64,000 bases of DNA from Macrostomum lignano (GCA_002269645.1 NIVC01000536.1:124001-188000), one strand, 5' to 3'; counted from the first letter of the stretch, positions 30,901 through 54,577 are shown. Numbers and translations are program-made. The notes: generated by a model not told the origin, from the sequence alone.

Positions 30901-32038
30901 AACACCCTACCCCCAACACCCTACCTAGAGAACCCGACCCCAACACCCTACCTGGGGAACCCGACCCTAACACCCTACCTGGGAACCCGACCCCAACACC
31001 CTACCTGGGGAACCCGACCCCAACACCCTACCTGGAGAACCTGACCCCAACACCCTACCTGGAGAACCTGACCCTAACACCCTACCTGGAGAACCTGACC
31101 CTAACACCCTACCTGGGGAACCCGACCCCAACACCCTACCTGAAGAACCTGACCCTAACAACCTACCTGGGGAACCCGACCCCAACACCCTACCTGGGGA
31201 ACCCGACCCTAACACCCTACCTGGAGAACCTGACCCCAACACCCTACCTGGGGAACCCGACCCCAACACCCTACCTGGAGAACCTGACCCTAACACCCTA
31301 CCTGGAGAACCTGACCCTAACACCCTACCTGGGGAACCCGACCCCAACACCCTACCTGAAGAACCTGACCCTAACAACCTACCTGGGGAACCCGACCCCA
31401 ACACCCTACCTGGAGAACCTGACCCTAACACCCTACCTGGAGAACCTGACCCTAACACCCTACCTGGAGAACCTGACCCTAACCCAAAATTACATTATTT
31501 TTCGCTTGTTTTCTTCATAGGTAAGTCGCATTTTTGGTTAAAAAGTAAGTCGCACGGCCGGTGTAAATCAGCGGCTTGCGCATGTATGGCAGTAATTACA
31601 ATGTTGCTTGAAGTGCGCCAGGATACACACCCCTGCCTCTCTAAACAAGCAAAAACTAAAAAAACTACAGCACTAGTCCGCAAAACTTGCCTGCATGAGC
31701 TCCGGCTGCAGGGTCAGGTCGCACAGCTGGCAATAGACATCGGGATGCTTAGCCTCCTTCTTGCGTTGAAACTCGGCGTCGCGCACCTTCTTGGCGTGCT
31801 TGGCACCGTTGATGTGCATCTGATAGGCGGCCTCGCTGGTGCACTTGGCGTCGCACAGGGAGCACATGAGAGCTCCGTCAACTGACATTGGCTGGTCGCC
31901 GCTTTGGTTACTACTAGATGCCGCCGCTCTCTGCTGTTTATTCAGCATCTCCTGGTGCTGGACGGTGCCCAGGTGGATCTGTAGCATGTTCTCGTCTAAT
32001 AGGTTGACATTGCACAAGCTGCAGAAGAAGTTGCTCAT
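26981..32038 (-). CDS. Matrin/U1-type C2H2 zinc-finger protein with five fingers (ZNF346/ZNF385/ZMAT3-like, putative dsRNA-binding), ~326 aa; exons complement(31691..32038, 28382..28486, 27978..28230, 26981..27255)
   Basis: Five widely spaced C-X2-C-X11..13-H-X5-H fingers: CSLC..HLGTVQH, CSLC..HINGAKH, CQLC..HLNGMKH, CSVC..HFNSKAH, CELC..HRKGYKH. Phases 0,0,1 are compatible, total 981 nt. Intron 1 needs a GC donor (CAG|gcaagt). Orthology not determined. Confidence 0.85.
27338..27966. repeat. (CAGA)n-type microsatellite, zinc-finger intron 3
   Basis: Directly visible. Confidence 0.95.
28565..31485. repeat. 27-bp satellite (CCTACCTGG[G/A]GAACC[C/T]GACCC[C/T]AACAC)n, ~105 copies, zinc-finger intron 1, with ~430-bp higher-order blocks
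   Basis: Directly visible; the variant CCTGAAGAACC recurs at ~29270, 29700, 30130, 30710, 31142 and 31358. Confidence 0.97.
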
Positions 32039-33939
32039 CTTGTGTGTGGGAAAGCAGATGCTTGCATGCATGAATGCAAATTATACACACATATATTCAC
32101 ATGATTATAAAACATACATGCGCAACTGCTGGCCGACCTGGCCGATCTAGCCACGTCACTGTAAATTGTGGTGGACCAAGGGTAGGTCGCAAAAATGCCC
32201 ACCCAAAAGAATAGACGTAGTAATAATTAGATGACGCGGCATTTAGCCCTAATAAGACAGTTATAGTTACTCCAACCGTTTACCCAAAATTGTGTTAATT
32301 TTTTATTTAGGATCAAACGGCCAATGTAAATCAGAGGGTTGCGAGAAAACTAGCTTTGGCACAACTTGACCATGGCTTAAATAGGGGCCATTGATATCTT
32401 TAGTATAGACATGAGTCAAAATCTATCTTAGATTCTAATCTTATCTTATCTTAGCAACAATAACTAATATTTCTTAGCAACAACAACAATAACAATTAAG
32501 GCTAAATGCTGGTCATCTAATTAGTACTACATCTATATTTTTCAAATCTAGGCATTTTTGCAACTTAATGTGGCTGGGCCCCTTGCCAACCAGATAGATC
32601 AGCTAGGTATTGCATATGCATGCTTTTATGTATAAGCAGAAGCCTATATAAAGAAACTAGCTAATTCACTTATATTAGAAACTATTTTATATTCTAAAGA
32701 ACTTTTGGTTAAAAGAATTGTACTACTTATAATTAGGAGATCTAAGACTTAAAGTAATAAATGAAAGCAAAATTAAGTTCAAGCCTTGGCTTTGTTAAAA
32801 TGGCTAAAACAAAGTCCTATCTTTGACTTGACTTATCAATAGTATTAATATTACTAGATATTACTTTGTAGGCTTCTTTGCAGGTTTTTTGCCAGAGACA
32901 AGGTACAAAATTTCACTATATACCCAATTTCAAGGTGTGATTTTAAGGCTCAGAGTGCAATTTCTTTTATTAAATGAGGCTTAAGCCTTAAAAGGAAAAA
33001 TAGATTATGTGACCATACCTAAACTGCATCCACTTTTCAATATCAGGGTGCAATTTCAAAATTTATGGTGCATATATACACACTCTATGCACAAAAAGCC
33101 TAAAGCAAAGGTCAAGCAAAAACTATATACAAAAAACAAAAACATTTAATTTTAAGTTTCTAAGTTATGTATTTGTATATATATAGGCCTAAGGCCTGCT
33201 TGCTTTTTATTTTATAGTAACATATAATGAAATATTTGTAAAAAAACTTTAGAAGCAAAAAATATTTATATAGATGCCAAATATAGGCCTATCCTATGTT
33301 TAACCTAAATTAAGGTCTCCAGTGAGATTTTGAAAGTTTCAAATTTACAAGCTATTTTTTAGATATGTATCTGATAGAAGACAATAACAGCATTAAAAAA
33401 TGGCACCTTGCAGATACCATAAATTGTGACTAGCTGATACCACAAATTTTTATTAAGTACCAGGTAAACCCTTATTAGAACTGTTACAATTTTTTCAAGA
33501 TTAAAATCAGCTGAAACATTGTTCAAATTTAAAATGACATTGAATGACATCATGCTCATTCCTCAGCCTTGATATTTTTCTACTAATTCTCAGATCCACA
33601 CTAGCAATATGCAGCCTGTTGCTCTTTTTCTTTGCAAGGTTGAAGGTGGCATAACCAATATTTTATGCCTGTAAGCTGAAAGCCACCATGGAAGAGCTCA
33701 TGATGGTATTTAGCACAATGATTCTTGATGACTGTCAGGAGGACAATCAATGGCACCTCCAAGCTAATATCTTGCTCAGCCTAGACTTCCTCATGACAGA
33801 CCATGTCATTGTAAATAAAAGTCTTAAAAAATGTTAGTTTTTTTGTTTCGGCCTTTGTATTCTATGCCATGCTAATCTTATCAATAAATCAATATATACA
33901 AGGACTTTACTAAAACAAATTTTTGTACACTTTGACTGC

Positions 33940-35200
33940 AGGTGCTAATTGATAAAATGCACCAGATCCTGGTAGAACTAGAACAAGCAATTCAGCAACT
34001 TGTCATGCATATTTTCTGTGGGATGCACATGATAGTGAACTTTCTATCTGTTGCTAAGGTTGGCCTGCACATATTTAAGCACTATGTGTTTGCTGATTCT
34101 GTGAGGGCTATGTTGCTTCCTTGATTTTGACCATCCAAAGTTGAATCTGGCATGCTGCACCTTATTTGCAAAGTGTGCAAAGCATTTCATCATAATGGCA
34201 ATGAATAATGCGGCATTGGCTACCCTTTGGCAATTTACCTTGAAGCCCATGGAAGACTGTGGATGGAAGATTTCTATAGAAACTACATATGTGGCTTTTC
34301 TAAATGGTGGCACTATTTTCTGGCAACAAAAAATCTTGCTCAATTTTCTGATAGAGTATCTGGCCAGCAACTGCTTATTGTTTATGGTATATGCTGACTT
34401 GGCATCACCATTGCTTCTCTGTGACTACTGTGCTTTTGGCCTTTTCAATATTTTGTTTATTCAACCATTGTGGGTTCTATTGCATTGCAAGGACATTACC
34501 ATTCTAGATATGAATAAGTGCTACAAGTGTGCCATTGCATGGTTGCATAGCCTAGATTTTGGCCATCCAAGGTTGAATCTGGCATGCTATACCTTATTAG
34601 CACAGCCTATAAAGCTTTAGTGAATGCCATTTTTGTATCTAGCAAGATGGATAGTGCTTTTCTAGAGCTGTGTAATACTCTCATGCAGGAAAATTACCTT
34701 ATTGATACATGGACTATATTCACAGCAGATCCTAACAATGCACTAGACAACAAGCTAGTTGGCCACGCCCAACAGGTTATCATGGTGCATATGGCTGTGC
34801 TCATAGAGCGGGAGGTTTAAGAACATCTACCTAATGATGCTAAGAAAGCTACCAAAGGACATGGCCACACTAGCATAAACTATTCCAAAGGAAAATGTGC
34901 CTGGCAAGTGTCTTGTAGTTCTTGATTATCTAGTCACTGACTATCCAAATATATACCCTATGACACATGAAGCCATGTTTTATTTAGCTAAAATAGCATT
35001 GCCTAATGGATAGCTGCAAAGTCTAAAGAATAACAATGCAAAACAATTGCTTGAGCACAAAATATTTTTGCAATGATAGAAATGCAATAGAAAGAAAATG
35101 ATATAGGTGTACAGAAGCGTTAGCAAGAGATCCTATATATACAACTTGCCAAAAAGCAACACAAAATGGATAGTGAAAAAGTGGCATACATGTTCCTGCA
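33940..35200 (+). pseudogene. Decayed DDE-type (RNase H fold) DNA-transposon transposase remnant; superfamily not assigned
   Basis: Broken frames read HIFCGMHMIVNF (CxxH-like), ESGMLHLICKVCKAF, FLNGGTIF...VYADL...CAFGLFNILFIQPLW...ILDMNKCY, LIEREV*EHLP and TIPKENVPGKC (where an ER-type catalytic motif would be expected). There are many stops and frameshifts, plus a ~45-nt internal duplication (34131/34563). Resemblance to invertebrate transposase-like proteins is from memory; no TIRs found. Confidence 0.5.
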
Positions 35201-37519
35201 ATTGCAGAATCAAATTGTGAAATAAAAGTAAATTTAAATGGAAAGTAATTATTTTGAAAAAATGAAAGAAATCTTAGCATGTATTGACTTCTCGCTATAG
35301 AGAGTATCAGCAAAAAAGTAAAAAAGTGAAACAAAGGAGCAAAAAAGTCATTTGATACGCCGTGATACTAGAAAATGAAGCTTGTAATAAGTCTCATTTT
35401 TTCTGGGATTCAATTACAATTTTTCCAGGTTGGAAAAAATTTGGCATATACTGGCATATCAAATAAATTGTATGAGATTTTAGTCAAGTGTACATTCAAC
35501 TTCAAGGTGTTCTGCACTATGGCTAAGTAGGAGAAGGCAATTGTTTCTTAGCTATAGCTTTCTAAGCTGATCATTAATGAGTGTTTCATTTAGAGTCCCT
35601 ACTATATTTTAAAAGGAAGTTCAATAATTTCTTTCCTTTTTTTATCACTTTTTGTTTAGAGTTTTGCTTCCTAAAAGATCATATGAAACTGCACATTTGA
35701 AAGATATATTTTTCTAGTTTTTTTTAATGAATTTTTTTGGATTTTTGTAATAACCAGTTTAACATAGCATGCTAGCAATTTAACTTCAAATTTTTAGAAA
35801 TTTTTCATCAAATTAGTGCATTGGAGTCCCTACCTATATAATTAAGCCTAATAAACCCTATAAAGAAATAAAGCCTACCCTATAGTCTATACGCTATACT
35901 AATATTATCAACATAGCTTACCTAGAAAACTGTAAAGAACCCAGAGTCCCAGAGAATTTTGAATATTTTGGCAAAAAAATGCAATCAAAATTACTAAATC
36001 AGTTCAATCTCTAGAGCATTACATTACAGAGAAGCATACAAACCTTAGAGATTTAGTATATTAATATATATTAGTATATATTTAGTGTAATTATTTTGTA
36101 TATTTAGATAATTAGATATTACATATGCAAAAACGCACCATGGCCCATGCTACAAAGAGTTTGTGGTGTTCTAATTCTATCAAAAGATTTCGTTTTGCTT
36201 GGTACAAATCCTTATACAATTGGAGCCAGCCAGAATGCATTTTGAGATTGAATGGGCTTAGGCCCATCTATTGAGTATTTACACTTTTATTATAAAATTA
36301 TAAAAGTTATAGAATGGAAAAATAATTAAAGAGGATTAAAAAGCTTTCGTATTGGAAAAGTAGATAATATAATAGCCCTTTCCTTGCTGTACCAGAATAC
36401 CATGCACGCCTTTCTCTATGCCAACGCACCACAAAATCGGAAAATGCATTGTCTGTAATAGTTCTATCGGACTATATATGGTCTTAGTGTAAATTGTAAA
36501 TGTTTTTAATTGTGTTACTTAAATCAGACTGTGTTAGTGTTACTAGTTACCAGTACCAGAGTATAATCCACATTACATGGCTGCTCTGTTCCTGTTAGCA
36601 GCATGACTCTATGATGGTCGATGTTGATGGTGTGTGCGATCACGGGCTCATCACGATGCAAACAATGCAAAAACAACAGAAAAAACCGCAAGAATTACAA
36701 CTATTTTAACAACAGAATATTCTAAAAGTTGTGAAACTGAATTAAAGTACTCTAAGAGAAAAATAAAAAAGTAAATAAATAAATGCTCTTTGCGTTAAAC
36801 CACAAAAACGTCGTGTTTAATTTCCTTTGGTTTTCACCTTTCCATCACTTATTTTAAACCCACATTGCCATGATTAAAGCGATAATCAACTAGGAACCAA
36901 AAAGGTTCAGATTGTTTATCTTAGAGTAAAATGACAAAGATAAAAAACATTAATTCTGAATATTTAGGAGAAGAACTACAAAGACGTCAGTAACTCCAGA
37001 CTAGAGCATCAAAAAATTATCAGTAATTGTCTGAAAAGACCACTCAGTGAGTACTTAAATGAAGCAACATTTTCTGGCAAATTAAGACATTTTGAAAGTT
37101 TTACAGGTTGCGACTGTATCTTCTCTGTCAAGTGTTTCAGTAAGTTTTTCAAGGTCACAAAAAGTGTATTTTTTACCCAACAAGAAAATTTTATAAGGAG
37201 CTTTAAATGTACTGCACTATGGCTTCCTTGAAAAAGCAAAAACAGTTTATTCGCTATATAGTCCGCTGCGATCATGAAGGATTTAAGGATATATTACAAC
37301 AGTCAACAGTATTAGATTAGAACTTATGTGCTTAAAAATAGGCCTATTTTGTACATTGATTTTACAATACGAGTAAACTATAAATTGCAACTTATTCTTG
37401 CCCAGTTCATTTATATATGGGAACGAGAATTGGACACTCATATTGTTTGCGTTTGCGAACCCCTTTTGCAGTTTTAGGGGCTCGAATTAACAAGAAATTG
37501 GTTCCATTTGTTGGATGTA

Positions 37520-40500
37520 ATGAAGTCAAACACGAAAAACACAAAGAACTTTGGAACCGACTTACTCAGAGCAATTAATTCAGGAAACCTGACATCAATT
37601 GACCATTTCATACAGCATGCAAGCGATGTTGACTCTTTTTATCAGCTCTTTGACACTAAAGGATCGCTGCTATACCTGGCAGCATCTGTGGGTCAAGAGG
37701 CTATTGTACAAAGACTGCTGCAAGCTCAAGCCGACGTCAATCTTAAAGCCGCAGATGGCGACTCGTCCTTACATGTAGCTGCAAGAAACGGCCATTACCG
37801 TGTTGTGAAAATCCTCATCGAAGCACAAGCCGATCTTGATATTCAAACAAAGAGAGGAGCCACGCCACTCTACATTGCGGCCATGAGAGGCCATCATGAG
37901 GTGGCTAGGTTACTAACTAGTGCGCAGGCCGACCTCAATGTTCAACAAGTGCACGGAGCAACAGCACTATACATTGCCGTGCAGGAGGGTCATCGCAAAG
38001 TTATTGAGTCGCTTATAAACGCTGGTGCCGACGTCAACATTAAAATAAAGAGCGGAGAAGGACCATTGCACTATGCCTCCCAGTCTAATCTTCACTCGTT
38101 GGTTGACATACTGCTACGAGCCTACGCTGATCAAAACATTCTTCAGGATGAGGGCGCTTCGCCTCTGATAGTTGCTTGCCAGTTGGGCCACTTAGGCATG
38201 GTAGAAAGGCTTTTGAGTGCCATGGCCGATCCATCTGTGGAGTCTACCGCTGGCTTCACAGCACTGCACTTGGCGGCGCAGAATGGGCATCATCGGATTG
38301 TGCAAATTCTGATGAATGCCGCAGCCGAAACGGTTCACAAGGATTGGCAGGGATATTCACCGCTTTATATGGCCGCCCAGAACGGGCACACTCGAGTTGT
38401 CCAGGCTTTTATTGCCGCCCAGGTGAATGTCGATCTCCAGACTAAATATGGTGCTACACCTCTGTATATTGCTGCCGGTAAGGGAAAAAACGACATGGTG
38501 AAGCTGCTTCTTGGAGCGCAGGCGAACATGGATATTAAGCGTCATATGACGAGCGACTCGCCGCTTTACATCGCGTCTCAAATGAACAACAGCCGTGTCG
38601 TTGAAACTCTCGTCAAATTTCAAGCGGACTTGAGCTCACAAATTAGCAATGGCTTCACACCACTTCACATCGCTGCTCAGGAGGGACACCAGAAGGTGGT
38701 TAATGTTCTGTTACGAGCTGGTGCCAATGCCAGTCTTCGGGATTTCAACGGATTTTCGCCACTCTACTTCTCAGCCCAGAATGGGCATCGGAAAGTGGTG
38801 GATGCACTGGTCACTCAAGCCAACGCGGATGTCAATATACAAGGGTTCGATGGAGAAACAGCATTGCACGCTGCGTCCCAGCTGGGCCATCATGGAATCG
38901 TACAGGTGCTCATTAAGGCACTATCGGATCCTGACGTTCAACAGTTGCACGGCTGTACAGCAATCTACCTGGCTGTGCAAAACGGGCACAGTAAAGCAGT
39001 GGATGTGCTGATCGAGGCGCAGGCTGACGCTAACATTCAGCCATCAAAATGCAGTCCTCCGTTGTACTCAGCAATACTTAAAAATCACAGGGAGATGGTA
39101 GAGAATCTCATTATAAAGTCCAGGGTCGATGTTAATCAGCAACGAATCGATGGCATCGGTGATTCGCCGCTTTATTTGGCAGTGGAAAGCGACAATCGAA
39201 ACTGGGCGATCAGGATGCTGCTGCACGCTCAGGCGGACGTGAATCTGCAGACTAGCCGCTTAGGCTGGTCACCGCTGCACCTGGCCTCACACGAAGGCTG
39301 CTTGAAAGCCGTTAAAGCTCTGGTCGCAGCTCAGGCCGACGTTGACTTGGCGACGCTAAGCGGTGAATCCCCAATCGCCTTAGCAATCCGACAGGGCCAT
39401 AATCAGGTGATCGAAGAGCTCAACAAAGCGGAGGCAACCACTTTTCCGAAAGTTCCTTTAATTCATGAGCTTCAGCCCGCGACCGAAGTGACGGGACAAG
39501 TTTTGCAGGAATCTGTGTAAGTAATAATATCTTTTTTAGTGACATGCTTATTTGTTGTGTTCATTTGTTGCTGAAGTGTACCACCAGCTCAATTTCTTTC
39601 AGCTCAGATCCAAGCGACTCGGATCTCAGCCGTCGCCTTCACTCTAGTCTTGTTAAGTCAGGATTCGTTCACTCGAGGGCCACCCTGCAGAGTGCAGTGT
39701 CCGACGTTCTGCAGCAGATTCTGCGCCAGCGAGGCGTCAGACTATCGCAGGAGTACATGTTTATCGTTGGCAGCTACTCAGAAGGCTGGGGCAACAGTCT
39801 GACCTGCTTTGACGGAAAACCAGACGTAGAGTCTGACATTGACATGATGCAGCTATTCGTCGGCAGGAAGTATCACTTGAAAGGAAGCTGTCAGTGCAAG
39901 TCGGTGCCAGATTCGGAAAACTTTGTTCAGTACGAGAATGGTCACATCTTGTGCTCTGGATTCGGTAAGCTTTTCAAATCTTAGCTATATGCGTGTATAC
40001 TGTATTCTGCTGCACTCATAACTTACAAAAGATCAAAGATACTAATCAAAACATGCTGAATTGCCTGGGTGCCTTTTGTTCTGTGAGTGCAGTCGTGTTG
40101 TTCGAGGCTCTATACCTGACCGACAATTGACGGCGTTGTTAAAGGTGGTGGTCGAAACTGTCGAGACCATCCTGCTGTACAACGCCGAGATCTGACAGAT
40201 TCGCTCGAATAGATATTCGACGCAGCGCAGACTAGCCGCCGCAGTCCACCTCAGCAGTAGGTGCTACTGCTGAGGTGGAAGGCTCCCTACGTGCGAGGGA
40301 TCTTCGTCTTGGTACGTCTCGTCGACTGCCTGATGGCTGATGCTGGTGTCTCCACTCTGTCAGCGGTGCAGTCTACTTTCACGTCTAGGCCCACGCCTAT
40401 GCTGCCGCTTTTATGACTTTGCGGCGTATCGCTTTATTGTTGTTGATACGCAAAAATCGCACCACGATAGTTGACCTCTGACTAAATGCACTATGCTTGA

Positions 40501-41981
40501 CTTTCGCAGCGTCCAGTCCGGCCAGAGCCTCCATCGGATCGATCCTAGCCCAGCGGCCGGCCGTAGACCAAGTGAGCGCATGCGAGCTCTGCTCCTACCC
40601 GCCCGTGCTGCCGCTACAACCAGCCCGGTTAGTCAAGTCCAACATTCCCGAGAGGACTTTACGGTCCCTGCAAGCGGCATTGCAATCGCCCGACTTTCCC
40701 TGTCACGTCGTTCACGCAGCGCCGCCAGGGCAGGGAGGCGAGCAGCTCAGAGTGAGTACAACATTTCTAGAGAACCGGCTGCTGCGAAGCTTGAGTACCA
40801 TACAGGGCCAGGTGTTTGTGACTTTAAAGTATCTCGTAAAGAAGGTGATCGGGCGCAGGGTCAATGGAGTCAAAGCTTACCATGCCAAGACGCTGGTATT
40901 CCGCTTACTGGACGAAACACCAGCCCAGCGATGGCAGCCGGATCAGCTGGTGAGCCTCGTGAGACAGGCGCTGCTGATGTTGTTGGACGGGTTGGAGAAT
41001 AGCAACTTAACTGCAGACAATCGAATCTTGACTCATTACTTCTTAAACGACGCGGGCTTGTACCTCAAGGGCAGCGATCGCAGCAGCACTGACAGCATCG
41101 CAAGTGTGCTAAAAGACTCGATAAACCGGCTGCCAGAGTTGCTGACTGAATTTGAGAACAGCTTGCGACTAATCGATCCAACCGCAGGATTTCGCTTTCA
41201 TCCGTTTGTAGTCCTGCCGCAGTTGTATCCACACCAGACACCGCTACCGGATCCGACAGCTGTGGAGTACCATCAGATCTACGATGTTGTCTGCGAAGCC
41301 ATGCTGCTGCTGTCCAGCTCCGCTGTCAAAGACACGGAGTTTCTCGCTCGCCTTCTCGGCCGGCTACCAGACAGAGCTGCCTATTCGACTAGGGAGGCCC
41401 TGCGGGCCATGGCTGGCCTGAAGCTTGGCTACGAGAGCACTGCGAAGCGGATCCTGCTGCACAGCCTGGGCCATCAGACTGGCCGAGGCATACCCTGGTC
41501 GACTGCTGCCAGCGAAGTGACTAAAGACGAAGAAACAACAGAATACGTGTGGAAACACCTGAACGGCTGCGATTCAGCGTTCAAGTTTTGCCTCAGATTC
41601 GACCGGCGTCCCGTGTTCGAATTTCTGCCAAAATTTCCTAGAGACGTCTTTCCCACTTTTCTGCAACAGGTGAGCGTTACCGATTACTATATGAACTTCG
41701 ACGCTCTGCTCAGGTGTCTTCAGTTTGAGCTGCTAGCTACAGACACGACCCCTGGCGCAATGGCCTGGTTTAACGACGTTGCTAAACGACAGAGCGGCGA
41801 CGCGGACCTGCAAGAAGTGCTGACGGCTCTGCACTTCTGTCCGGACGCGGAGCTGCTGGATGAACTGGTCAGCAGCCACGAAAGCATCGTGTCCGAAGCC
41901 ATCAATGCTGGCTGTAGCGAGGCGATAAGAGAATGGGAGCGATTTCTGCGGATTAAACAGGTGATTACAATGAGAAGCTGA
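37520..41981 (+). CDS. Ankyrin-repeat (~19 repeats) plus Mab-21/cGAS-like nucleotidyltransferase (cGLR-like) fusion with C-terminal extension, ~1276 aa; exons 37520..39516, 39603..39964, 40510..41981
   Basis: Exon 1 carries ~19 TPLH/Y.AA..GH..VV..LL..GADVN repeats. The ORF-track stop at 39518 lies inside a gtaagt donor (39517), and an 86-nt intron joins in frame to tttcag|39603. Exon 2 has the NTase motif IVGSYSEGWG...ESDIDMM. A phase-1 intron leads to exon 3 with AVDQVSA (third acidic residue) and the Mab-21 helical lobe LRVSTTFLENRLL...LKYLVKK...VKAYHAKTLVFRLLDETP..RW...LTHYF. Total 3831 nt, in frame. Confidence 0.85.
40130..40380 (+). mobile_element. Degenerate non-LTR retrotransposon (LINE) fragment, post-RT C-terminal region, in intron 2 of the ANK-cGLR gene
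   Basis: GTCGAGACCATCCTGCTGTACAACGCCGAGATCTG translates to VETILLYNAEI(W), resembling the RTE/CR1-type VES.LLYG.E.W motif, followed by frameshifted remnants. Confidence 0.5.
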
Positions 41982-42799
41982 TCAACTCATCAGTACCGGT
42001 AGTTTGTAATTTTCCTGCGATATTTTCTTTTCAGTCCGCAGCTTCAATTGCCGATCAAGTGATCATCGAGCCAATCCACGAGGAACAGCTGCAAACGGCA
42101 TTGGCTGGCACAGACTCCGGAGCAAATAAAGTGACGCAACTGTCATAAATTATAACTAAACTGTTGAGCTAACTACTAACCCTAAGCAATGTCCAACACG
42201 GTGTTACCAATGCCTCGTATTAATTAACAATCGAGGGTTTCCCGGCTTTCCTCACAGATTTACTGTCGAACACAACTTACTTCTGCATCACACTCAAACA
42301 CTGCAAATACTGCTCTAGTAGCAAACACTGCTCCTTGAAATGACTGATTGACTGATATGGGAACAAGACAGGTAAAAACTCCCCTCCCCCAGACTCGTCT
42401 TTTTTTACTATTTTTCGACTTTTTCAAATCGTACAATGTAACAAATGATAACCCTTTTGGCTGGAATTCAATTTACTAGATGCTATTTTTACTTTCAAAG
42501 ACTGTCTCGAAAACAGCCTTAAAGGTATTCCATATGAACTTTTCGTATAGTATCCCGAATTTAGAACTCTTCTACGCTTGTAAGCTTTCGCTTTTGCGTA
42601 TTTTGTTTTTTTACGTTTTCTATATCTCTTGTGCGACATCAATTCAGGGCTTCTGCACGAAAATTGACCGAGGGAGGTGTGTGCATCCGTGTGCGTGATC
42701 AGAGGTCAGCGAAATTGCTGCCCGCCTCCTCAGGGTCGACTGTGGCTTTTGGTTTGAAGCAGTGCCCGAAATACCCGCTGCAAACTACTTTAGATCTTC

Positions 42800-43745
42800 T
42801 TCTCCTACTGCTGTCTCTGTCTGCTTCTACTGCTGTCTTTATCTGCTTCTACTGCTGTCTCTATCAGCTTCTACTGCTGTCTTTATCTGCTTCTACTGCT
42901 GTCTCCCTCTGCTTCTACTGCTGTCTCCAACTGCTTCTACTGCTGTCTCCCTCTGCTTCTACTGCTGTCTTCCTGTGCTTTTACTGCTGTCTCCCTCTGC
43001 TTCTACTGCTGTCTCTATCTGCTTCTACTGCTGTCTCTATCAGCTTCTACTGCTGTCTTTATCTGCTTCTACTGCTGTCTCCCTCTGCTTCTACTGCTGT
43101 CTCCAACTGCTTCTACTGCTGTCTCCCTCTGCTTCTACTGCTGTCTTCCTGTGCTTTTACTGCTGTCTCCCTCTGCTTCTACTGCTGTCTCTATCTGCTT
43201 TTACTGCTGTCTTCCTGTGCTTTTACTGCTGTCTCCCTCTGCTTCTACTGCTGTCTCTATCTGCTTTTACTGCTGTCTTCCTGTGCTTTTACTGCTGTCT
43301 CCCTCTGCTTCTACTGCTGTCTTCCTGTGCTTTTACTGCTGTCTCCCTCTGCTTCTACTGCTGTCTCCCTCTGCTTCTACTGCTGTCTTTATCTGCTTCT
43401 ACTGCTGTCTCTATCTGCTTCTACTGCTGTCTTCCTGTGCTTTTACTGCTGTCTCTATCTGCTTCTACTGCTGTCTTCCTGTGCTTTTACTGCTGTCTCT
43501 ATCTGCTTCTACTGCTGTCTTCCTGTGCTTTTACTGCTGTCTCTATCTGCTTCTACTGCTGTCTTCCTGTGCTTTTACTGCTGTCTCTATCTGCTTCTAC
43601 TGCTGTCTTCCTGTGCTTTTACTGCTGTCTCCCTCTGCTTCTACTGCTGTCTTCCTCTGCTTCTACTGCTGTCTTCCTCTGCTTCTACTGCTGTCTTCCT
43701 CTGCTTCTACTGCTGTCTTCCTCTGCTTCTACTGCTGTCTTTATC
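42800..43745. repeat. ~22-bp tandem repeat (CTGCTTCTACTGCTGTCT[CTAT/CCCT/TCCT])n between the convergent ANK-cGLR and cytohesin genes
   Basis: Directly visible; source of the false Cys/Leu-rich ORFs. Confidence 0.95.
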
Positions 43746-44304
43746 TGTTTGTACCGCTATCACCTGTATTTATCTAATTAGTGATTTATTTTAAACACTA
43801 ACTCAGCAAATTCCTACATCATAACTATATAAACATGTAAAAAATAGACGAGCGAGCTTGCATAAACAATCAATCTTTCAGCAAATTAATGATTATGGAC
43901 ATCGATATTGCAGGGTCCGATGTTATTTATAATCTGTGTATTATTTCACAACAAAAATATAGTCTAAAAGACAAAATGAACCTGGCCTTTAAGCCAAACA
44001 CTCATTTATTCGATGCTACTGACAAGAGTAGTATTAAAAAATCAAATGATATTTTTCCAAATTAAAAAATATAGCCACAAATAAAGCAAGTAAGAAACTG
44101 CTTAGAAGCGTAATAATACTTAACGACGCGACAAAAATGAATAAACAAATTCCAATCTCAGAACAGACAATCACAGTATTGAGTTGCACTATTAATAAAA
44201 CTATTATTTTAAAGTAGATCAGCAAATCAGTATTTACAGCTCGATGTAGTCGAAAAATGGCAAAAATCAACGCATTCTGAAAGAGGTTTAATGAACATCA
44301 GATA

Positions 44305-44918: not shown

Positions 44919-47900
44919 TCACTGCGGCACGGGCTGCGGCTGGTAGCTTAAACTCCGCTTGACAGTGAAGAAGCGCTGCTCTTGAATGCTGTCCGTGAGG
45001 GCGCGAACCCAGGACTGCAGGTCGTCCAACGACTGGGCGGAGAACTTGTACACGCTGTGCCTGCCGGCCACCACCGAGTTGGACGAGTCGGTCTTGTACG
45101 CCTCGATCCGCTCGTCTCGATGGCTGAACAGCTCGAAGCAGAAGCTCTTAGCCTTGTCTGGCGCTTCGCGAACACCCAGATCCCTTAACTGTATGATCCC
45201 CTTGGGATAATTGCTGGACTTGTCAGCCAGGTAGCTGAGCTGGCCGCCGTGAAGCATGCAGTAGCGCCGCTTCCAGGTGCGCACCTTGCCGCCCTGGAGT
45301 TGCGTTGGGGTGTTAGATGAGATTGACAGCTGGGACAACCGCGGGGCAATCTTTATTAGCATTAGTATTAAATCCTTTCTTAGTTCAAAATCTCGCTAGT
45401 CAAAGCAATTGTTTTCAAAATCTCATTGCTCACGAATTATTGGTTTTTAAAATCTCATCTCTCACGAATTATTGTTTTCAAAATCTCATCCCTCACGAAT
45501 TATTGTTTTCAAAATCTCATCCCTCACGAATTATTGTTTTCAAAATCTCATCCCTCACGAATTATTGTTTTCAAAATCTCATCGCTCACGAATTATTGTT
45601 TTCAAAATCTCATCGTCACAAACTATTAGCTACAAAATCTCATCCCTCACGAATTATTGTTTTCAAAATCTCATCCCTCACGAATTATTGCTTTCAAAAT
45701 CTCATCCCTCACGAATTATTGTTTTCAAAATCTCATCCCTCACGAATTATTGCTTTCAAAATCTCATCCCTCACGAATTATTGCTTTCAAAATCTCATCG
45801 TCACAAACTATTAGCTACAAAATCTCATCGCTCACGAATTATTGTTTTCAAAATCTCATCGTCACAAACTATTAGCTACAAAATCTCATCCCTCACGAAT
45901 TATTGTTTTCAAAATCTCATCCCTCACGAATTATTGCTTTCAAAATCTCATCCCTCACGAATTATTGTTTTCAAAATCTCATCGCTCACGAATTATTGTT
46001 TTCAAAATCTCATCGTCACAAACTATTAGCTACAAAATCTCATCCCTCACGAATTATTGTTTTCAAAATCTCATCCCTCACGAATTATTGCTTTCAAAAT
46101 CTCATCTCTCACGAATTATTGTTTTCAAAATCTCATCCCTCACGAATTATTGCTTTCAAAATCTCATCCCTCACGAATTATTGTTTTCAAAATCTCATCC
46201 CTCACGAATTATTGTTTCCAAAATCTCATCCCTCACGAATTATTGTTTCCAAAATCTCATCTCTCACGAATTATTGCTTTCAAAATCTCATCCCTCACGA
46301 ATTATTGTTTTCAAAATCTCATCCCTCACAAACTATTAGCTACAAAATCTCATCCCTCACGAACTATTATCTGAATATTAGCTTTTGAACCCCCCCCCCT
46401 TAGAAAACGATTCGTTTCAGTTATTCACAAAGAAGACTCGCGCAATCCTTCAATTCAGCCGAACCCACCTGCTTGTACAGGTAGCCCTCCTTGATCACAT
46501 TGCACACGCTGTGCAGCAGGTCCTCAAAGGAATCGCCGCCATTATTAACAAACGGCTGCAGCCGGATGTCCTCGTAGATGTCGCGGACAAAGGCCCGGTC
46601 CAGGTCGCGCAGATCCGCCCTCTCCAGCATGGCCTGAAAGTCCTCCGGGCTGCCGATTCTGCGGGGGTGTGGGATCAGCTGATTGGATGTGGGATCAGCT
46701 GATTGAGTGTGGGATCAGCTGATTGGATGTGGGATCAGCTGATTGACTGTGGGATCAGCTGATTGAGTGTGGGATCCGCTGATTGGGTGTGGGATCCGCT
46801 GATTTAGGGTGTGGGATCCGCTGATTGGATGTGGGATCAGCTGATTGGGATGTGGGATCCGCTGATTGAGTGTGGGATCCGCTGATTGAGTGTGGGATCC
46901 GCTGATTGGGTGTGGGATCCGCTGATTGAGTGTGGGATCCGCTGATTTGGTGTGGGATCCGCTGATTGAGTGTGGGATCAGCTGATTGGGTGTGGGATCC
47001 GCTGATTGAGTGTGGGATCAGCTGATTGGGTGTGAGATCCGCTGATTGAGTGTGGGATTCGCTGATTGGGTGTGGGATCCGCTGATTGAGTGTGGGATCC
47101 GCTGATTGAGTGTGGGATCCGCTGATTGAGTGTGGGATCAGCTGATTGAGTGTGGGATCAGGGAAAGGTCGGGGAAAGGGGCACGAAGGGTCCGAGCCTG
47201 TGAGCCCACATCACCACAGATCCGCTGATTGGGGTGTGGGATCCGCTAATTGGGTGTGGGATCCGCTGATTTGGGGGTGTGGGATCCGCTGATTGGGTGT
47301 GGGATCCGCTGATTGGGGTGTGGGATCCGCTGATTGGGTGTGGGATCCGCTGATTTGGGGGTGTGGGATCCGCTGATTGGGTGTGGGATCCGCTGATTTG
47401 GGGGTGTGGAACCCGCTGATTGAGGTGTGGGATCAGCTGATTTGGGGGTGTGGGATCCGCTGATGGGTCAGATGGGATCAGCTGATTTAGAGGAAGGAAG
47501 CGCGTCGTACGCGAGACTGTGGAGGATCGCAGCCAGGGTCAGTACGCGAACCCGGGTCGGGGAAAGGGGCACGAAGGGTCCGAGCCTGTGAGCCCACATC
47601 ACCACAGATCCGCTGATTAGGGTGTGGGATCCGCTAATTGGGTGTGGGATCCGCTGATTGGGTGTGGGATCCGCTGATTGGGTGTGGGATCCGCTGATTG
47701 GGGTGTGGGATCCGCTGATTGGGTGTGGGATCCGCTGATTTGGGGGTGTGGAACCCGCTGATTGAGGTGTGGGATCAGCTGATTTGGGGGTGTGGGATCC
47801 GCTGATGGGTCAGATGGGATCAGCTGATTTGGGGGTGTGGGATCCGCTGATTTTCGGGTGTGGGATCAGCTGATTTGGGGATGTGGGATCTGCTGATTTT

Positions 47901-50900
47901 CGGGTGTGGGATCTGCTGATTTTCGGGTGTGGGATCAGCTGATTTGGGGATGTGGGATCAGCTGATTTTCGGGTGTGGGATCAGCTGATTTGGGGGTGTG
48001 GGATCAGCTGATTTTCGGGTGTGGGATCAGCTGATTTTCGGGTGTGGGATCAGCTGATTGGGATCAGCTGATTAGGTGTGGGATCAGCTAAAATACAAAA
48101 TTTGATGAGCTTGTTACATTCTTTGAGAAATGTCTAAATACGAATTATTACAAAGCCACGCGCCGCGCTAACCTGGTTGTTTTATCCTTCTTAGCGTTCT
48201 CATTGTGCAGCGCAGTGTTGAGAATCATGCAGGCGTAGCACAGGACAAAAATTCGATCGGCGCTGAGTGGGAAGTCAGGATTCTGAGAGGCGAACGACTT
48301 GGCGAACACCGAGATGCAGCGCTCGATCACCTGCGATGAGAGAGATTTGAGGGCGCGTTAGCGAACTGGAACTGCGACATTAGAGTTATTCTAATTTAAC
48401 AGTAAGCAACAAAATGAAGCACTAAGATGGTAGCATTAAACTTAACATGAAGTGACGCAGATTGAGCCTTCAACCTCTCTCTCTCCCTCTTACTCGCTTC
48501 TGATTGGCTCTTCAATCTGGAAGAGTCATGTCTTCAGTTTTGATATCTATCAACACAGTGTGACCTTATTTGACTTCACCGTGACCTTAACCTTGACCTC
48601 AAAAACCATAAAACATGACCTTCTGTGAGTAAAAACTAGACATCAGATGCAAATTAACAGCAAAAATATTTTTCAAAATTGTTTTATAAATAAATAATTT
48701 AACCAACTAGTAGAAAACAGACAGAACAGGTGCGTTAATTAAACCGTAAATAAAGGATTCCGACTCGACACCATCAGAGAGCAGGTCCACTTGGTTATTG
48801 GCGTCTGTGTTTGATGGTAATTTATTTTATTGCACATTCATTCATAAATACATGAATGAAATTATATAGATTGATAGTCTGCATCAAGAATTACCTCTAG
48901 ATGTACACGATTTATACAATTCAGACACGGGAGCCAAGAGCCTGATGTACCTGAGGCTCATGAGTCAGATTTAGATGAGCCAAGAGCCTGATGTACCTGA
49001 GGCTCATGAGTCAGATCTAGATGAGTCAATTAGAGCCTGATGTACCTGATGCTCACGAGTCAGATCTAGATGAGTCAATTAGAGCCTGATGTACCTGATG
49101 CTCACGAGTCAGATCTAGATGAGTCAATTAGAGCCTGATGTACCTGATGCTCACGAGTCAGATCTAGATGAGTCAATTAGAGCCTGATGTACCTGATGCT
49201 CACGAGTCAGATCTAGATGAGTCAATTAGAGCCTGATGTACCTGATGCTCGCGAGTCAGATCTAGATGAGTCAATTAGAGCCTGATGTACCTGATGCTCA
49301 CGAGTCAGATCTAGATGAGTCAATTAGAGCCTGATGTACCTGATGCTCACGAGTCAGATCTAGATGAGTCAATTAGAGCCTGATGTACCTGATGCTCACG
49401 AGTCAGATCTAGATGAGTCAATTAGAGCCTGATGTACCTGATGCTCACGAGTCAGATCTAGATGAGTCAATTAGAGCCTGATGTACCTGATGCTCGCGAG
49501 TCAGATCTAGATGAGTCAATTAGAGCCTGATGTACCTGATGCTCACGAGTCAGATCTAGATGAGTCAATTAGAGCCTGATGTACCTGATGCTCACGAGTC
49601 AGATCTAGATGAGTCAATTAGAGCCTGATGTACCTGATGCTCACGAGTCAGATCTAGATGAGTCAATTAGAGCCTGATGTACCTGATGCTCACGAGTCAG
49701 ATCTAGATGAGTCAATTAGAGCCTGATGTACCTGATGCTCACGAGTCAGATCTAGATGAGTCAATTAGAGCCTGATGTACCTGATGCTCACGAGTCAGAT
49801 CTAGATGAGTCAATTAGAGCCTGATGTACCTGATGCTCACGAGTCAGATCTAGATGAGTCAATTAGAGCCTGATGTACCTGATGCTCACGAGTCAGATCT
49901 AGATGAGTCAAGAGCCTGATGCATGAGTCAGATCTAGATGAGCCAAGAGCCTGATGTACCTGATGCTCGCGAGTCAGATCTAGATGAGTCAGATCTAGAT
50001 GAGTCAGATCTAGATGAGTCAGATCTAGATGAGTCAAGAGCCTGATGTACCTGATGCTCACGAGTCAGATCTAGATGAGTCAAGAGCCTGATGCATGAGT
50101 CAGATCTAGATGAATCAAGAGCCTGATCTACCTGATGCTCACGAGTCAGATCTAGATGAGTCAGATCTAGATGAGTCAAGAGCCTGATGTACCTGATGCT
50201 CACGAGTCAGATCTAGATGAGCCAAGAGCCTGATGTACCTGATGCTCGCGAGTCAGATCTAGATGAATCAAGAGCCTGATCTACCTGATGCACACGAGTC
50301 AGATCTAGATGAGTCAATTAGAGCCTGATGTACCTGATGCTCACGAGTCAGAGCTAGATGAGTCAGATCTAGATGAGTCAAGAGCCTGATGTACCTGATC
50401 CTCACGAGTCAGATCTAGATGAGTCAAGAGCCTGATGCATGAGTCAGATCTAGATGAGCCAAGAGCCTGATGTACCTGATGCTCACGAGTCAGATCTAGA
50501 TGAGTCAGATCTAGATGAGTCAAGAGCCTGATGTACCTGATGCTCACGAGTCAGATTTAGATGAGTCAAGAGCCTGATGTACCTGATGCTCACGAGTCAG
50601 ATTTAGATGAGTCAAGAGCCTGATGTACCTGATGCTCACGAGTCAGACTTGAGAATCAAGAGTCAAATTAAGATAGTGTAAGATGCCAGCGAGTGAGATA
50701 CTCAGAGACAATATTTAGATGCAGCCAGGCCCGCACTCACCTGGCTCTCCCCAGCCACGGCAAAGGTGCCCAAAAATTCTCTCAACGCCTGCATCAACTT
50801 TTTGCCGGCAAAGTTAAACAGGCCGGCGAAGGCGTCTAGGGTCTGCACGTTGAAGGGCTTGCTGTGCGCGAAGTAGTCCCCGACTGCCCGCCTGCTGAGA

Positions 50901-51761: not shown

Positions 51762-53329
51762 GCAGTGACACGATTTTCTAACTTCAGACTACTACTTATA
51801 GTAGGACTTTGAGAATAAACTCGTATTTTAACAAATTGTTATTAAAGATTTAAGAATGCCAATCACTTTATCTACCTGCCTTACTTGCTTACCCTGGACA
51901 AACGTGATCTTTACAAAGTTTTTTAGGCTACTGGGTGAGCTACTATCCAATTCCTAGAAACTCTGGAAAAGGTTGTGTTGCAAACTAGATCTCTAGTTAT
52001 TGCCAAGGGTTAATAGAATAGGTGGCAATGCCTGTGCTATATTTTATATCTAGATACATTGATGTCCCCTTCAGCTAAGCTAAGTAAGCTAGCTACAACT
52101 AAGCACACAAACTTCACTTGTCTTCTACTATAATTATGGTCATAGCCTATTAGATATTATACCAACTATGGTAAAATAGGTATTTATGGTACTAAAGGAT
52201 ATTTAGTTGGATTTAAAATTAGTAAACTAGCAAGCAGTGCCCTCATTAGGGAGCCAAAAAATGCAGTACAAAAATTTAAATAAACTACATATAGCATCTC
52301 TTTGCGATAACCCCAGCAATTCTATATAAGCCTAACATCTCAGCAATCCCCCCACGAGCCTTAACATACCAACCTCCCCTCCTTGACATCTCAGTGATGC
52401 CTTAGTCTTAGATGCCCCAATAAGCCTTAAAATCTAAAAAATCCCCTGTTAACCTTGAAACCTTGAGAGAGTGGCTAAAGATTTTTTTATAAATCTTTGA
52501 ACAAAATTTAAGTTTAACAGCTAACAAAATGAAAAGTATTTAAACAAGGAATTGAAAAACAGGTATTATATGAACTTGATCATTGATTGAGAACAATTCT
52601 TCTAGTAGATAATTAAAAAAAGTTTCTATGTATTCAGTTAATATCAAATATCTAGATGTTTAGATAGTTAACAATATTACTTGTACTATATTAGGCATTA
52701 AAAACTAAGGATACTTTTAAAAGAAGAAACAAATGAAAAGAGGGCATTTAAAACAAATATTTAGATCAGCATTAATTTTTGCAATTAAAGTATTTACAGT
52801 AGGCCTATACAAATATATGTGTAATGCAGTAGCAATTGCACTGGCATTTGTAAATGAAAACAGGCAAGAAAATACAAAAAGAAGATATAGTTTTAAGGAG
52901 TCTGGTGCAATAATAGATTCAATTGATATAAGATGGGTAGCAACAACATGGTACACATGGGGTGTTGTCTAAGTTTTCGTGTTGGTTGTGATTTGTGAAG
53001 GAAGATTATTTATGAGGTATCTTACAATTAATCTTCTTACAATAAATATTACATTAATTATATAGTCAACAGTCATTAGATTAGGTTAGGTATAGCCATA
53101 TAGACATTAAAGCAGATTTTTGGGATAGGGAATGGATATCAGCTAATTTGCTATCTAATATACTAAAAATATTAGCTAAATGCTAATATCAGCTATAAAT
53201 GGTCAGCTAATACAGTCAGTCCAAGTATGCTTTTAAGCCAGTGTGATTCATTTACCATACTAAAATCTAAATATACTAAATCTCTTAAGGTTTGTATGTT
53301 TTATTGAATGAATGAGTGAATGAATGTCT

Positions 53330-54524: not shown

Positions 54525-54577
54525 TGTCTCATAGACATAGTATTTATATTTAATATCTATTAAATCTATTATTAATT

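What the first reader, a model, noticed from the sequence alone, without database searches (positions are those of the whole stretch)
37520..41981. Hidden ankyrin-cGAS-like receptor (ANK-cGLR) fusion with an intact-looking catalytic triad
Seen: three ORFs that the track lists separately join through canonical GT-AG introns (39517-39602 and 39965-40509) into one frame of ~1276 aa. It reads ~19 ankyrin repeats, then an NTase core (GSYSEG...ESDID...AVDQV), then a Mab-21 helical lobe (LKYLVK, KAYHAKT, RW, HYF). Established: hG[S/T]-Xn-[D/E]x[D/E] plus a third Asp is the Pol-beta-type active site used by cGAS and cGLRs to make cyclic dinucleotides, whereas developmental MAB21L proteins lack a functional triad. 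Inference: this is an innate-immune sensor in which a long ankyrin solenoid acts as a ligand- or partner-binding module controlling second-messenger synthesis. I cannot tell without a search whether this architecture is already described in this lineage.
Basis: partly seen in the sequence, partly recalled or inferred. Interest (0 to 1): 0.88.

Follow-up and report, generated by a model that had tools for sequence, protein, structure and literature searches.

The report
Flatworm ankyrin-cGLR fusion gene, already catalogued
The three reading frames do join into one Macrostomum lignano gene for a long ankyrin-repeat array fused to a cGAS-like enzyme with an intact-looking active site, but the gene, its large family and this architecture are already in public catalogues, and no activity, ligand or downstream receptor is known.

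Summary
ORFs 37508-39520, 39544-39984 and 40497-41981 join through GT-AG introns (39517-39602, 39965-40509) into one 1276-aa frame. Two annotated paralogs have introns at the same positions, the second in the same phase. A database model of the same gene crosses the exon 2/3 junction identically.

The protein has an N-cap plus 18 ankyrin repeats, then a cGAS/Mab21 nucleotidyltransferase core, then a family-specific C-terminal domain of about 265 aa. G-S, D-I-D and the third Asp are kept in about 91-96% of 46 family members and in 23-24 of 24 distant cGLRs. An AlphaFold model (pLDDT 92) matches cGAS, coral Sp-cGLR1, MB21D2 and MAB21L1 best.

A short third intron (41961-42034) and a fourth exon (to 42148) are likely, giving 1307 aa.

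The organism is Macrostomum lignano. UniProt A0A1I8IF24 is essentially this gene. Li et al. 2023 list ankyrin-cGLR fusions, including M. lignano entries, and cloned five M. lignano relatives; none is labelled among their 15 selected active enzymes.

Catalysis, ligand and receptor remain inferred. STING in this species was not tested. Interest is low to moderate: a correct reading of a known orphan family.

The parts
37520..39516 (+). Exon 1. ATG start, N-terminal cap, 18 ankyrin repeats and a linker (aa 1-665 plus two bases of codon 666).
   Evidence: ORF and splice reading. Pfam Ank_2 E = 5e-140 with 17 Ank stretches. An in-frame stop lies 14 codons upstream of the ATG.
37652..39454 (+). Ankyrin-repeat array: 18 repeats of about 33 aa (aa 45-645), preceded by a cap helix region (aa 13-44).
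   Evidence: Repeat table by period; Pfam.
39517..39602 (+). Intron 1 (86 nt, GTAAGT...tttctttcAG, phase 2).
   Evidence: Paralogs P0003 and P0040 have an intron at the homologous place, between the post-ankyrin linker and the first NTase helix. The database model A0A1I8IF24 instead appears to use donor 39363 and acceptor 39607, which would drop the last repeat and the linker; my reconstruction reproduces its junction.
39603..39964 (+). Exon 2. N-terminal spine helices and the first half of the NTase core. Gly-Ser is at 39769-39774 and Asp-Ile-Asp at 39835-39843.
   Evidence: Conservation: G56/S57 44 of 46 family and 24 of 24 distant cGLRs; D78 44/46 and 23/24; D80 42/46 and 24/24.
39965..40509 (+). 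Intron 2 (545 nt, GTAAGC...ctttcgcAG, phase 1).
   Evidence: Same position and phase (G|GT after ...PG[YF]) in paralog loci L001 and L002. Junction GF|ASSPA is identical in A0A1I8IF24.
40510..41960 (+). Exon 3. Rest of the NTase core (third Asp at 40566-40568), the Mab-21_C helical lobe and the family-specific C-terminal domain. If intron 3 is not removed, the frame continues to the TGA at 41979-41981.
40815..41105 (+). Mab-21 HhH/H2TH-like lobe (Pfam PF20266), containing LKYLVKK, KAYHAKT and HYF.
   Evidence: Pfam 26.0 bits against a cut-off of 24.1. A Macrostomum-only profile hits cGAS over this stretch at E = 3.7e-5.
41181..41978 (+). Family-specific C-terminal domain (about 265 aa, mostly helical with a small sheet). 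No Pfam family matched at E <= 1 and there was no confident PDB match.
   Evidence: High-confidence AF2 model. The only PDB fold matches beyond the cGAS-like part have probability <= 0.1. The domain is conserved across paralogs.
41961..42034 (+). Putative intron 3 (74 nt, GTGATT...ttttcttttcAG, phase 0).
   Evidence: The tail of A0A1I8IF24 (SAASIADQVIIEPIHEEQL...) maps to 42035-42100. Splice signals are shown. The tail is not conserved in paralogs, so support is a gene model plus signals only.
42035..42148 (+). Putative exon 4 (37 aa, SAASIADQ...KVTQLS, stop at 42146-42148). It gives a 1307-aa product.

Best explanation
This is one protein-coding gene of the free-living flatworm Macrostomum lignano, with three exons and probably a fourth. 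It encodes an N-terminal solenoid of 18 ankyrin repeats, a cGAS-like receptor (cGLR) nucleotidyltransferase domain with a complete active-site signature, and a C-terminal helical domain found only in this family. It belongs to a large expansion of such genes known so far almost only from Macrostomum, and most members with enough upstream sequence carry ankyrin repeats.

Most likely mode of action (inferred): the enzyme is held inactive. Binding of a ligand or partner switches on synthesis of a nucleotide second messenger from NTPs, which a downstream receptor reads. The ankyrin array and/or the C-terminal domain is the most probable binding site.

Shown here: gene structure, domain architecture, conservation of catalytic and nucleotide-pocket residues, and the fold. 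Inferred: catalysis, product, activating ligand, the role of the ankyrin array and an immune function.
For: - Splice model in frame with consensus signals.
- Intron positions shared with annotated paralogs in GCA_002269645.1, the second in the same phase.
- The same gene is modelled as a single ankyrin-to-Mab-21 protein in UniProt A0A1I8IF24, near-identical over the shared parts.
- Pfam finds ankyrin at E = 5e-140 and Mab-21_C above its cut-off.
- The deep profile search gives 85 cluster representatives at E < 1e-30. Every family member whose source I looked up is M. lignano, apart from one unnamed metagenome contig. Next come proteins with Pfam Mab-21 NTase plus Mab-21_C domains, one of them from the clam Mercenaria, at E 1e-14 to 1e-9.
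- The family-plus-distant profile hits Sp-cGLR1 (8gjy) at 3e-28 and cGAS at 2e-20. It places D140 on the SVD(I/L) third Asp, R201/S203/E208 on WRLSFSxxE, and Y244/K247 on SYHVKT.
- Catalytic residues are kept in 42-44 of 46 family members and 23-24 of 24 distant cGLRs.
- AF2 model has pLDDT 92.3 and pTM 0.93. G-S follows strand 1, D78/D80 open strand 2 and D140 lies on a core strand.
- Foldseek best hits are cGAS (E = 5e-7, TM 0.58 on target length), Sp-cGLR1, MB21D2 and MAB21L1.
- 41 of 93 family members with an NTase N-terminus have at least 3 ankyrin repeats upstream.
- Li et al. 2023 classify this Macrostomum family as cGLRs and list the ANK-cGLR architecture.
Against: - No activity is known for any member. 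Five M. lignano relatives (30-36% identical) were cloned in the Li et al. screen as constructs that start at or just before the first NTase helix, without ankyrin repeats. None carries the label given to the 15 selected active enzymes.
- Pfam's Mab-21 NTase model (PF03281) does not hit this protein directly.
- The single sequence finds nothing in PDB. The Macrostomum-only profile reaches cGAS only at 3.7e-5, and only over the C-lobe.
- I could not read model coordinates, so co-location of the three carboxylates was not measured.
- STING in M. lignano was not tested. The planarian Schmidtea lacks both cGAS and STING, and the parasitic flatworms seen in Li et al. Table S5 are listed with none.
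- No RNA-seq was available for the junctions.
Confidence: 0.75

Rival explanations
1. The cGLR core itself senses double-stranded nucleic acid, as in cGAS, Drosophila cGLR1 and Sp-cGLR1. The ankyrin array is not the sensor but an adaptor that positions the enzyme or recruits downstream partners.
For: The characterised active cGLRs with a known ligand respond to dsDNA or dsRNA. The core alone has a mildly basic predicted pI of 8.4, while the ankyrin part (6.3) and the C-terminal part (5.5) are acidic.
Against: The five ankyrin-free Macrostomum constructs in the Li et al. screen, where poly I:C and ISD45 dsDNA were supplied as potential activators, are not labelled among the selected actives. 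The whole protein is acidic (pI 6.35), whereas Li et al. report that nucleic-acid-sensing cGLRs are more positively charged. The family keeps two extra modules that nucleic-acid-sensing cGLRs do not need.
Confidence: 0.2
2. It is a non-enzymatic Mab21-fold scaffold, like MAB21L1 or MiD49/MiD51. It may bind a nucleotide as a cofactor but acts through protein-protein contacts of the ankyrin array.
For: MAB21L1, MiD51 and MiD49 are among the fold matches. No product is known for any family member.
Against: G-S, D-x-D, the third Asp and the pocket residues R201, S203, E208, K227, Y244 and K247 are kept in 42-46 of 46 paralogs that are otherwise only about 27-54% identical. That pattern is expected under selection for catalysis. 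Li et al. describe Mab21L1/2/3 as lacking a predicted functional active site.
Confidence: 0.1
3. The fusion is a gene-model artefact. The ankyrin ORF and the Mab-21 ORFs are separate genes, or the locus is a decaying pseudogene copy in a repeat-rich region.
For: No transcript data were available here. The window is dominated by minisatellites. The public model of the same gene differs from mine at intron 1, inside exon 3 and at the 3' end.
Against: The frame is open for 3.8 kb with no internal stop or frameshift and aligns to paralogs along its full length. Splice signals are consensus. The same three-exon layout occurs in two annotated paralogs with the ankyrin and NTase parts in one model. 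41 family members carry the same fusion.
Confidence: 0.03

Closest known systems
UniProt A0A1I8IF24 (Macrostomum lignano, 'ANK_REP_REGION domain-containing protein', 1145 aa)
   Same: Essentially the same gene. It is near-identical apart from a few substitutions over the shared parts, has the same ankyrin-to-cGLR fusion and the identical exon 2/3 junction, and its tail maps to window 42035-42100.
   Different: It is an automatic model. It lacks the first 48 aa, appears to use a weaker upstream donor that drops the last ankyrin repeat and linker, and replaces about 58 conserved residues of exon 3 with 6 unrelated ones. It is not annotated as Mab-21 or cGLR.
Macrostomum lignano cGLR clade in Li et al. 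2023 (PMC9980059): PAA86972.1, PAA45980.1, PAA57558.1, PAA93208.1, PAA68676.1; ANK-bearing PAA67649.1 and PAA58690.1
   Same: Same family. Identity is 30-36% over the cGLR part, with family-HMM E values of 1e-67 to 1e-105. The motifs are shared: GS[FY]xEGWG, SD[IV]D, RVSTxxLE, LK[TS]YH[AV]KT and FHPF. Table S2 lists PAA-prefixed entries (the prefix of the M. lignano proteins in Table S3) with Ank_2 domains.
   Different: They are different paralogs. The cloned constructs start at or just before the NTase helix, without ankyrin repeats, and have no label as a selected active enzyme.
Characterised metazoan cGLRs and cGAS (Sp-cGLR1 8GJY, human and mouse cGAS, Drosophila cGLR1)
   Same: Bilobal Pol-beta NTase plus Mab-21_C fold. 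G-S, D-x-D and the third Asp are shared. So are the R-x-S...E and Y-H-x-K-T pocket motifs.
   Different: Only 13-16% identity in the structural alignments. This protein adds an 18-repeat ankyrin array, a C-terminal domain of about 265 aa and a family-specific Cys/His cluster (H91, C96, C98, H114, C148, H186) that the distant cGLRs lack. Ligand and product are unknown.
Repeat-fused cGLRs of other phyla (Stylophora pistillata ANK- and death-domain cGLRs; TPR-cGLRs; the clam Mercenaria protein and unnamed relatives found here)
   Same: The same design principle: a cGLR core joined to a repeat-type interaction module. The nearest relatives outside Macrostomum in the deep search are about 700-aa proteins with Mab-21 NTase plus Mab-21_C domains and long C-terminal extensions, one with a weak TPR hit.
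   Different: The repeats in those nearest relatives lie C-terminal rather than N-terminal. Identity is 16-23%. The fusions are probably independent events.
MAB21L1, MB21D2 and MiD49/51
   Same: Same fold.
   Different: Li et al. describe Mab21L1/2/3 as lacking a predicted functional active site. This family keeps one.

Membership tests
cGAS-like receptors (cGLR; metazoan cGAS/DncV-like nucleotidyltransferases, Mab-21 superfamily) | Pol-beta NTase h-G-[GS] motif after the first core strand | tested here: met
   IVGSYSEG. G56/S57 are kept in 44 of 46 family members and 24 of 24 distant cGLRs. In the model the motif follows strand 52-55 and opens helix 57-60.
cGAS-like receptors (cGLR; metazoan cGAS/DncV-like nucleotidyltransferases, Mab-21 superfamily) | Catalytic [DE]-h-[DE] pair and a third acidic residue on a core strand | tested here: met
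   D78-I-D80 and D140. They are kept in 42-44 of 46 and 23-24 of 24 sequences. D140 aligns with the SVD(I/L) third Asp of cGAS and Sp-cGLR1 in the profile alignment.
cGAS-like receptors (cGLR; metazoan cGAS/DncV-like nucleotidyltransferases, Mab-21 superfamily) | The three carboxylates converge on one metal-binding site in three dimensions | tested here: inconclusive
   Secondary-structure positions fit: D78/D80 at the start of strand 78-92 and D140 in strand 138-147. Model coordinates were not readable, so no distances were measured.
cGAS-like receptors (cGLR; metazoan cGAS/DncV-like nucleotidyltransferases, Mab-21 superfamily) | Mab-21 C-terminal helical lobe (Pfam PF20266) | tested here: met
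   26.0 bits against a gathering cut-off of 24.1, at residues 223-319 of the C-terminal part.
cGAS-like receptors (cGLR; metazoan cGAS/DncV-like nucleotidyltransferases, Mab-21 superfamily) | Direct match to the Pfam Mab-21 NTase domain (PF03281) | tested here: not met
   No hit at E <= 1. The link is transitive only: the family profile finds proteins that do match PF03281, and the fold matches.
cGAS-like receptors (cGLR; metazoan cGAS/DncV-like nucleotidyltransferases, Mab-21 superfamily) | Overall bilobal cGAS fold | tested here: met
   AF2 pLDDT 92.3. The top 36 PDB matches are all cGAS, Sp-cGLR1, MAB21L1 or MB21D2, with E down to 5e-7 and TM 0.48-0.58 on target length.
cGAS-like receptors (cGLR; metazoan cGAS/DncV-like nucleotidyltransferases, Mab-21 superfamily) | Synthesis of a nucleotide second messenger, switched on by a ligand | not testable with these tools
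   This needs biochemistry. Relatives in the Li et al. screen carry no label as a selected active enzyme.
cGAS-like receptors (cGLR; metazoan cGAS/DncV-like nucleotidyltransferases, Mab-21 superfamily) | A cognate receptor (STING or other) in the same genome | not tested
   No M. lignano genome or proteome could be searched with a STING profile here. Literature searches found no statement for this species. The planarian Schmidtea lacks STING.
Ankyrin-repeat proteins | Tandem repeats of about 33 residues with the TPLH...GH...V..LL...GA..N signature | tested here: met
   Ank_2 E = 5e-140 and Ank E = 1e-110 with 17 stretches. 18 repeats in register at a period of 33-36 residues.
MAB21L1-type developmental Mab-21 proteins | Mab-21 fold without a functional active-site signature | tested here: not met
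   The fold is shared, but the active-site signature is present and conserved. It is therefore not of this subgroup.

The most novel reading that the evidence does not exclude
The Macrostomum ANK-cGLR clade could be a protein-sensing branch of cGLR immunity rather than a nucleic-acid-sensing one. In this reading the variable-length ankyrin solenoid recognises a pathogen protein or a perturbed host protein, in the manner of the repeat sensors of NLR/STAND receptors. The family-specific Cys/His cluster and C-terminal domain would couple that binding to catalysis. The product would be read by something other than a canonical STING, given that other flatworms examined lack cGAS and STING. Nothing here excludes this, and nothing here tests it.
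Probability: 0.15. Interest if true: 0.7.

Novelty: already known. Interest (0 to 1): 0.3.

Why it matters
Li et al. 2023 report that most flatworms have no cGLRs beyond Mab21-like proteins. The planarian Schmidtea lacks both cGAS and STING. Macrostomum lignano instead carries a very large private expansion of cGLR genes, mostly fused to ankyrin arrays.

These are orphan receptors: no ligand, product or receptor is known. The relatives tested so far were cloned without their ankyrin part. A correct full-length model such as this one is what would be needed to test whether the repeat array is the missing activating module.

M. lignano is a laboratory model, so the question looks tractable. The finding itself is a correct re-discovery, not a new kind of system.

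Tried and rejected
- Single-sequence search of PDB with the C-terminal 610 aa found nothing meaningful.
- The first AF2 run, with 11 close paralogs, failed in the NTase core: residues 44-213 had pLDDT < 50. It was discarded in favour of the 70-sequence run.
- The second word-indexed homolog search, using the profile, returned only close Macrostomum paralogs. The distant relatives came only from the exhaustive profile search.
- tblastn of the spliced protein against the window found no second copy or fragment.
- Pfam hits on other long ORFs of the window (Phage_tail_C, Yae1_N, FAM222A, TrAA12) have zero or one matched stretch and lie within or overlap tandem-repeat arrays. I rejected them as low-complexity artefacts.
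- Literature searches for STING or cGAS in Macrostomum gave nothing specific.
- I considered using the last homolog search for STING and decided against it. A flatworm STING would share few exact words with any query I could supply, so a negative result would mean nothing.
- An OAS-like or bacterial CD-NTase affiliation was considered and set aside. Those fold matches are much weaker (E 0.02-0.4) than the cGAS and cGLR matches.
Full report
**Observation**

The window is eukaryotic DNA.

Reading the junctions base by base gives two introns. The first has donor GTAAGT at 39517 and acceptor tttctttcAG ending at 39602. The second has donor GTAAGC at 39965 and acceptor ctttcgcAG ending at 40509.

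Joining 37520..39516, 39603..39964 and 40510..41981 gives 3831 nt. The product is one open frame of 1276 aa with a single terminal stop. An in-frame stop lies 14 codons upstream of ATG 37520. The first residues resemble the N-terminal cap that precedes the ankyrin repeats in paralogs.

**Support for the splice model without RNA data**

- Macrostomum lignano paralogs read straight through both junctions. An example is ...YINGHVKIPGY|ASSPATPF...PAVDQV in P0003.
- UniProt A0A1I8IF24 (P0038) is near-identical apart from a few substitutions over the shared parts. It has exactly the same exon 2/3 junction, GF|ASSPA.
- Two annotated paralogs in assembly GCA_002269645.1 (P0003 in locus L001, P0040 in locus L002) have the same three-exon layout. 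Each has a middle exon of about 115 aa. Their introns fall at homologous positions, and the second is in the same phase, G|GT after PG[YF].

Together these make a gene-model artefact very unlikely.

P0038 also shows that the gene probably continues. Its tail, SAASIADQVIIEPIHEEQL, maps to 42035-42100. A 74-nt intron fits in phase 0 at 41961-42034 (GTGATT...ttttcttttcAG). Exon 4 would then end at 42148, giving a product of 1307 aa. The tail is not conserved in paralogs, so this remains a likely but unproven correction.

**What the protein is**

The first 666 aa are ankyrin repeats (Ank_2 E = 5e-140). There are 18 repeats in register plus an N-terminal cap.

The remaining 610 aa hit only Pfam Mab-21_C, at 26.0 bits against a cut-off of 24.1. 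They do not hit the Mab-21 NTase model, and the single sequence finds nothing in PDB. The family is therefore divergent.

An exhaustive profile search found 726 relatives at E <= 0.001 and 85 cluster representatives at E < 1e-30. Every family member whose source I looked up is from M. lignano, apart from one unnamed metagenome contig. Below that block, at E of about 1e-14 to 1e-9, come proteins of about 700 aa. Those I scanned match both Pfam Mab-21 NTase and Mab-21_C above threshold, and one is from the clam Mercenaria.

Two profile searches of PDB sequences gave:
- The profile of family plus distant relatives hits Sp-cGLR1 (8gjy) at 3e-28, cGAS at 2e-20, MB21D2 at 4e-15 and MAB21L1 at 5e-13.
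- The Macrostomum-only profile reaches cGAS at 3.7e-5, over the C-lobe only.

**Active site**

Residues are numbered from the first residue of the 610-aa C-terminal part.

| Residue(s) | Family (46 sequences) | Distant cGLRs (24 sequences) |
|---|---|---|
| G56 and S57 | 44 | 24 |
| D78 | 44 | 23 |
| D80 | 42 | 24 |
| D140 | 43 | 24 |

The profile alignment places D140 on the SVD(I/L) strand that carries the third catalytic Asp of cGAS and Sp-cGLR1. It places R201/S203/E208 on WRLSFSxxE and Y244/K247 on SYHVKT. The assignment of those cGAS residues to the nucleotide pocket rests on my own knowledge of cGAS structures. All of these residues are kept in 45-46 of 46 family members and 22-24 of 24 distant cGLRs.

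**Fold**

A first AF2 run with 11 close paralogs failed in the NTase core. A 70-sequence alignment gave pLDDT 92.3 and pTM 0.93.

In that model G-S follows the first core strand. D78 and D80 open the second strand, and D140 lies on a later core strand. This is the Pol-beta NTase topology.

The 36 Foldseek hits against PDB with E <= 0.001 are all cGAS, Sp-cGLR1, MAB21L1 or MB21D2. The best is E = 5e-7 with TM 0.58 on target length. MiD49/51 follow, and bacterial CD-NTases and OAS3 are much weaker.

I could not read the coordinates. Co-location of the three carboxylates is therefore inferred from topology, not measured.

**Features beyond a plain cGLR**

- The last 265 aa or so form a confidently modelled, mostly helical domain with no confident PDB match. 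It is conserved across the paralogs.
- A Cys/His set is kept in 35-45 of 46 family members but is absent from the distant cGLRs: H91, C96, C98, H114, C148 and H186. A zinc site is a reasonable guess, but it was not tested.
- Predicted pI is 8.4 for the core, 6.3 for the ankyrin part and 5.5 for the C-terminal domain.
- Of 93 family members that include the NTase N-terminus, 41 have at least three ankyrin repeats upstream, and 30 have too little upstream sequence to tell. The fusion is thus the usual architecture of the clade. This gene sits at the long end of the range.

**What is already known**

Li et al. 2023 (PMC9980059) make three relevant statements or listings.
- Some cGLRs carry tetratricopeptide or ankyrin modules, and most platyhelminths have no cGLRs beyond Mab21-like proteins.
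- Their domain table lists PAA-prefixed accessions with Ank_2 domains; PAA is the prefix of the M. lignano proteins in their Table S3.
- Their screen table contains five M. lignano proteins, entries 89-93, cloned as constructs that start at or just before the NTase helix.

Those five proteins are 30-36% identical to the cGLR part of this gene and match the family HMM at 1e-67 to 1e-105. Enzymes selected as active carry a label in that table, and the five Macrostomum rows have none. This does not prove the five are inactive.

The planarian Schmidtea has neither cGAS nor STING (PMC13563047). M. lignano also retains Mx proteins, reported there in only some invertebrates, and contributes a sequence to a published RLR phylogeny. 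I found no statement about STING in M. lignano and had no means to search its genome.

**Mechanism**

Best supported: an orphan cGLR-type nucleotidyltransferase kept inactive until a ligand or partner engages it, which then makes a nucleotide signal. Conservation of the whole active-site set across paralogs that are otherwise about 27-54% identical argues for retained catalysis and against a MAB21L1-like scaffold.

Which module senses the ligand is open. The acidic overall charge and the lack of reported activity for ankyrin-free relatives in a screen that supplied poly I:C and dsDNA favour the ankyrin array or the C-terminal domain over the core groove. This support is weak.

**Verdict**

The gene, the family and the architecture are already in public catalogues. 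Function remains unknown.

Noticed in passing
window 40245-40279 (inside intron 2): A perfect 16-bp inverted repeat with a 3-nt loop (TCCACCTCAGCAGTAG / CTACTGCTGAGGTGGA). It is unique in the window. Its meaning is unknown.
   Followed up: partly
window 1-64000, for example 251-811, 19783-22087, 28567-31483, 42798-43740, 45408-46368, 48937-50647: The window holds more than 30 different minisatellite arrays with units of 4-60 nt. Most other long ORFs, such as 42631-43794, are translations of these arrays. I found no other clear protein-coding gene among the ten longest other ORFs I scanned.
   Followed up: partly
window 32001-38000 and 52001-56000: These are AT-rich blocks (GC 30-36%) set among repeat arrays with GC of 42-59%. 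The gene starts at the edge of the first block.
   Followed up: no
residues H91, C96, C98, H114, C148, H186 of the cGLR part (window about 39874-39945 and 40590-40706): This Cys/His set is conserved in 35-45 of 46 Macrostomum family members but absent from the distant cGLRs. It may be a family-specific zinc site, at a different place in the sequence from the cGAS zinc thumb as I recall it.
   Followed up: partly
L002 1-2728 (GCA_002269645.1, NIVC01001035.1): Two genes lie just upstream of the ANK-cGLR paralog P0040. The first is cut by the locus edge and has LRAT and Peptidase_C14 (caspase) domains. The second has LRAT alone.
   Followed up: no
P0032 (1346 aa), P0037 (1409 aa), P0045 (3379 aa): These family members have other architectures. 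P0032 has two complete cGLR units in tandem. P0037 has a cGLR part followed by Cys-rich repeats that look EGF-like to me. P0045 is a 3379-aa model with the cGLR unit at residue 2092. Some may be chimeric gene models.
   Followed up: no
P0022 (504 aa, JGI metagenome contig of 2867 bp): This family member is about 40% identical and comes from an environmental metagenome, not from the M. lignano assemblies. The family therefore probably exists in other organisms that have not been sampled as genomes.
   Followed up: no
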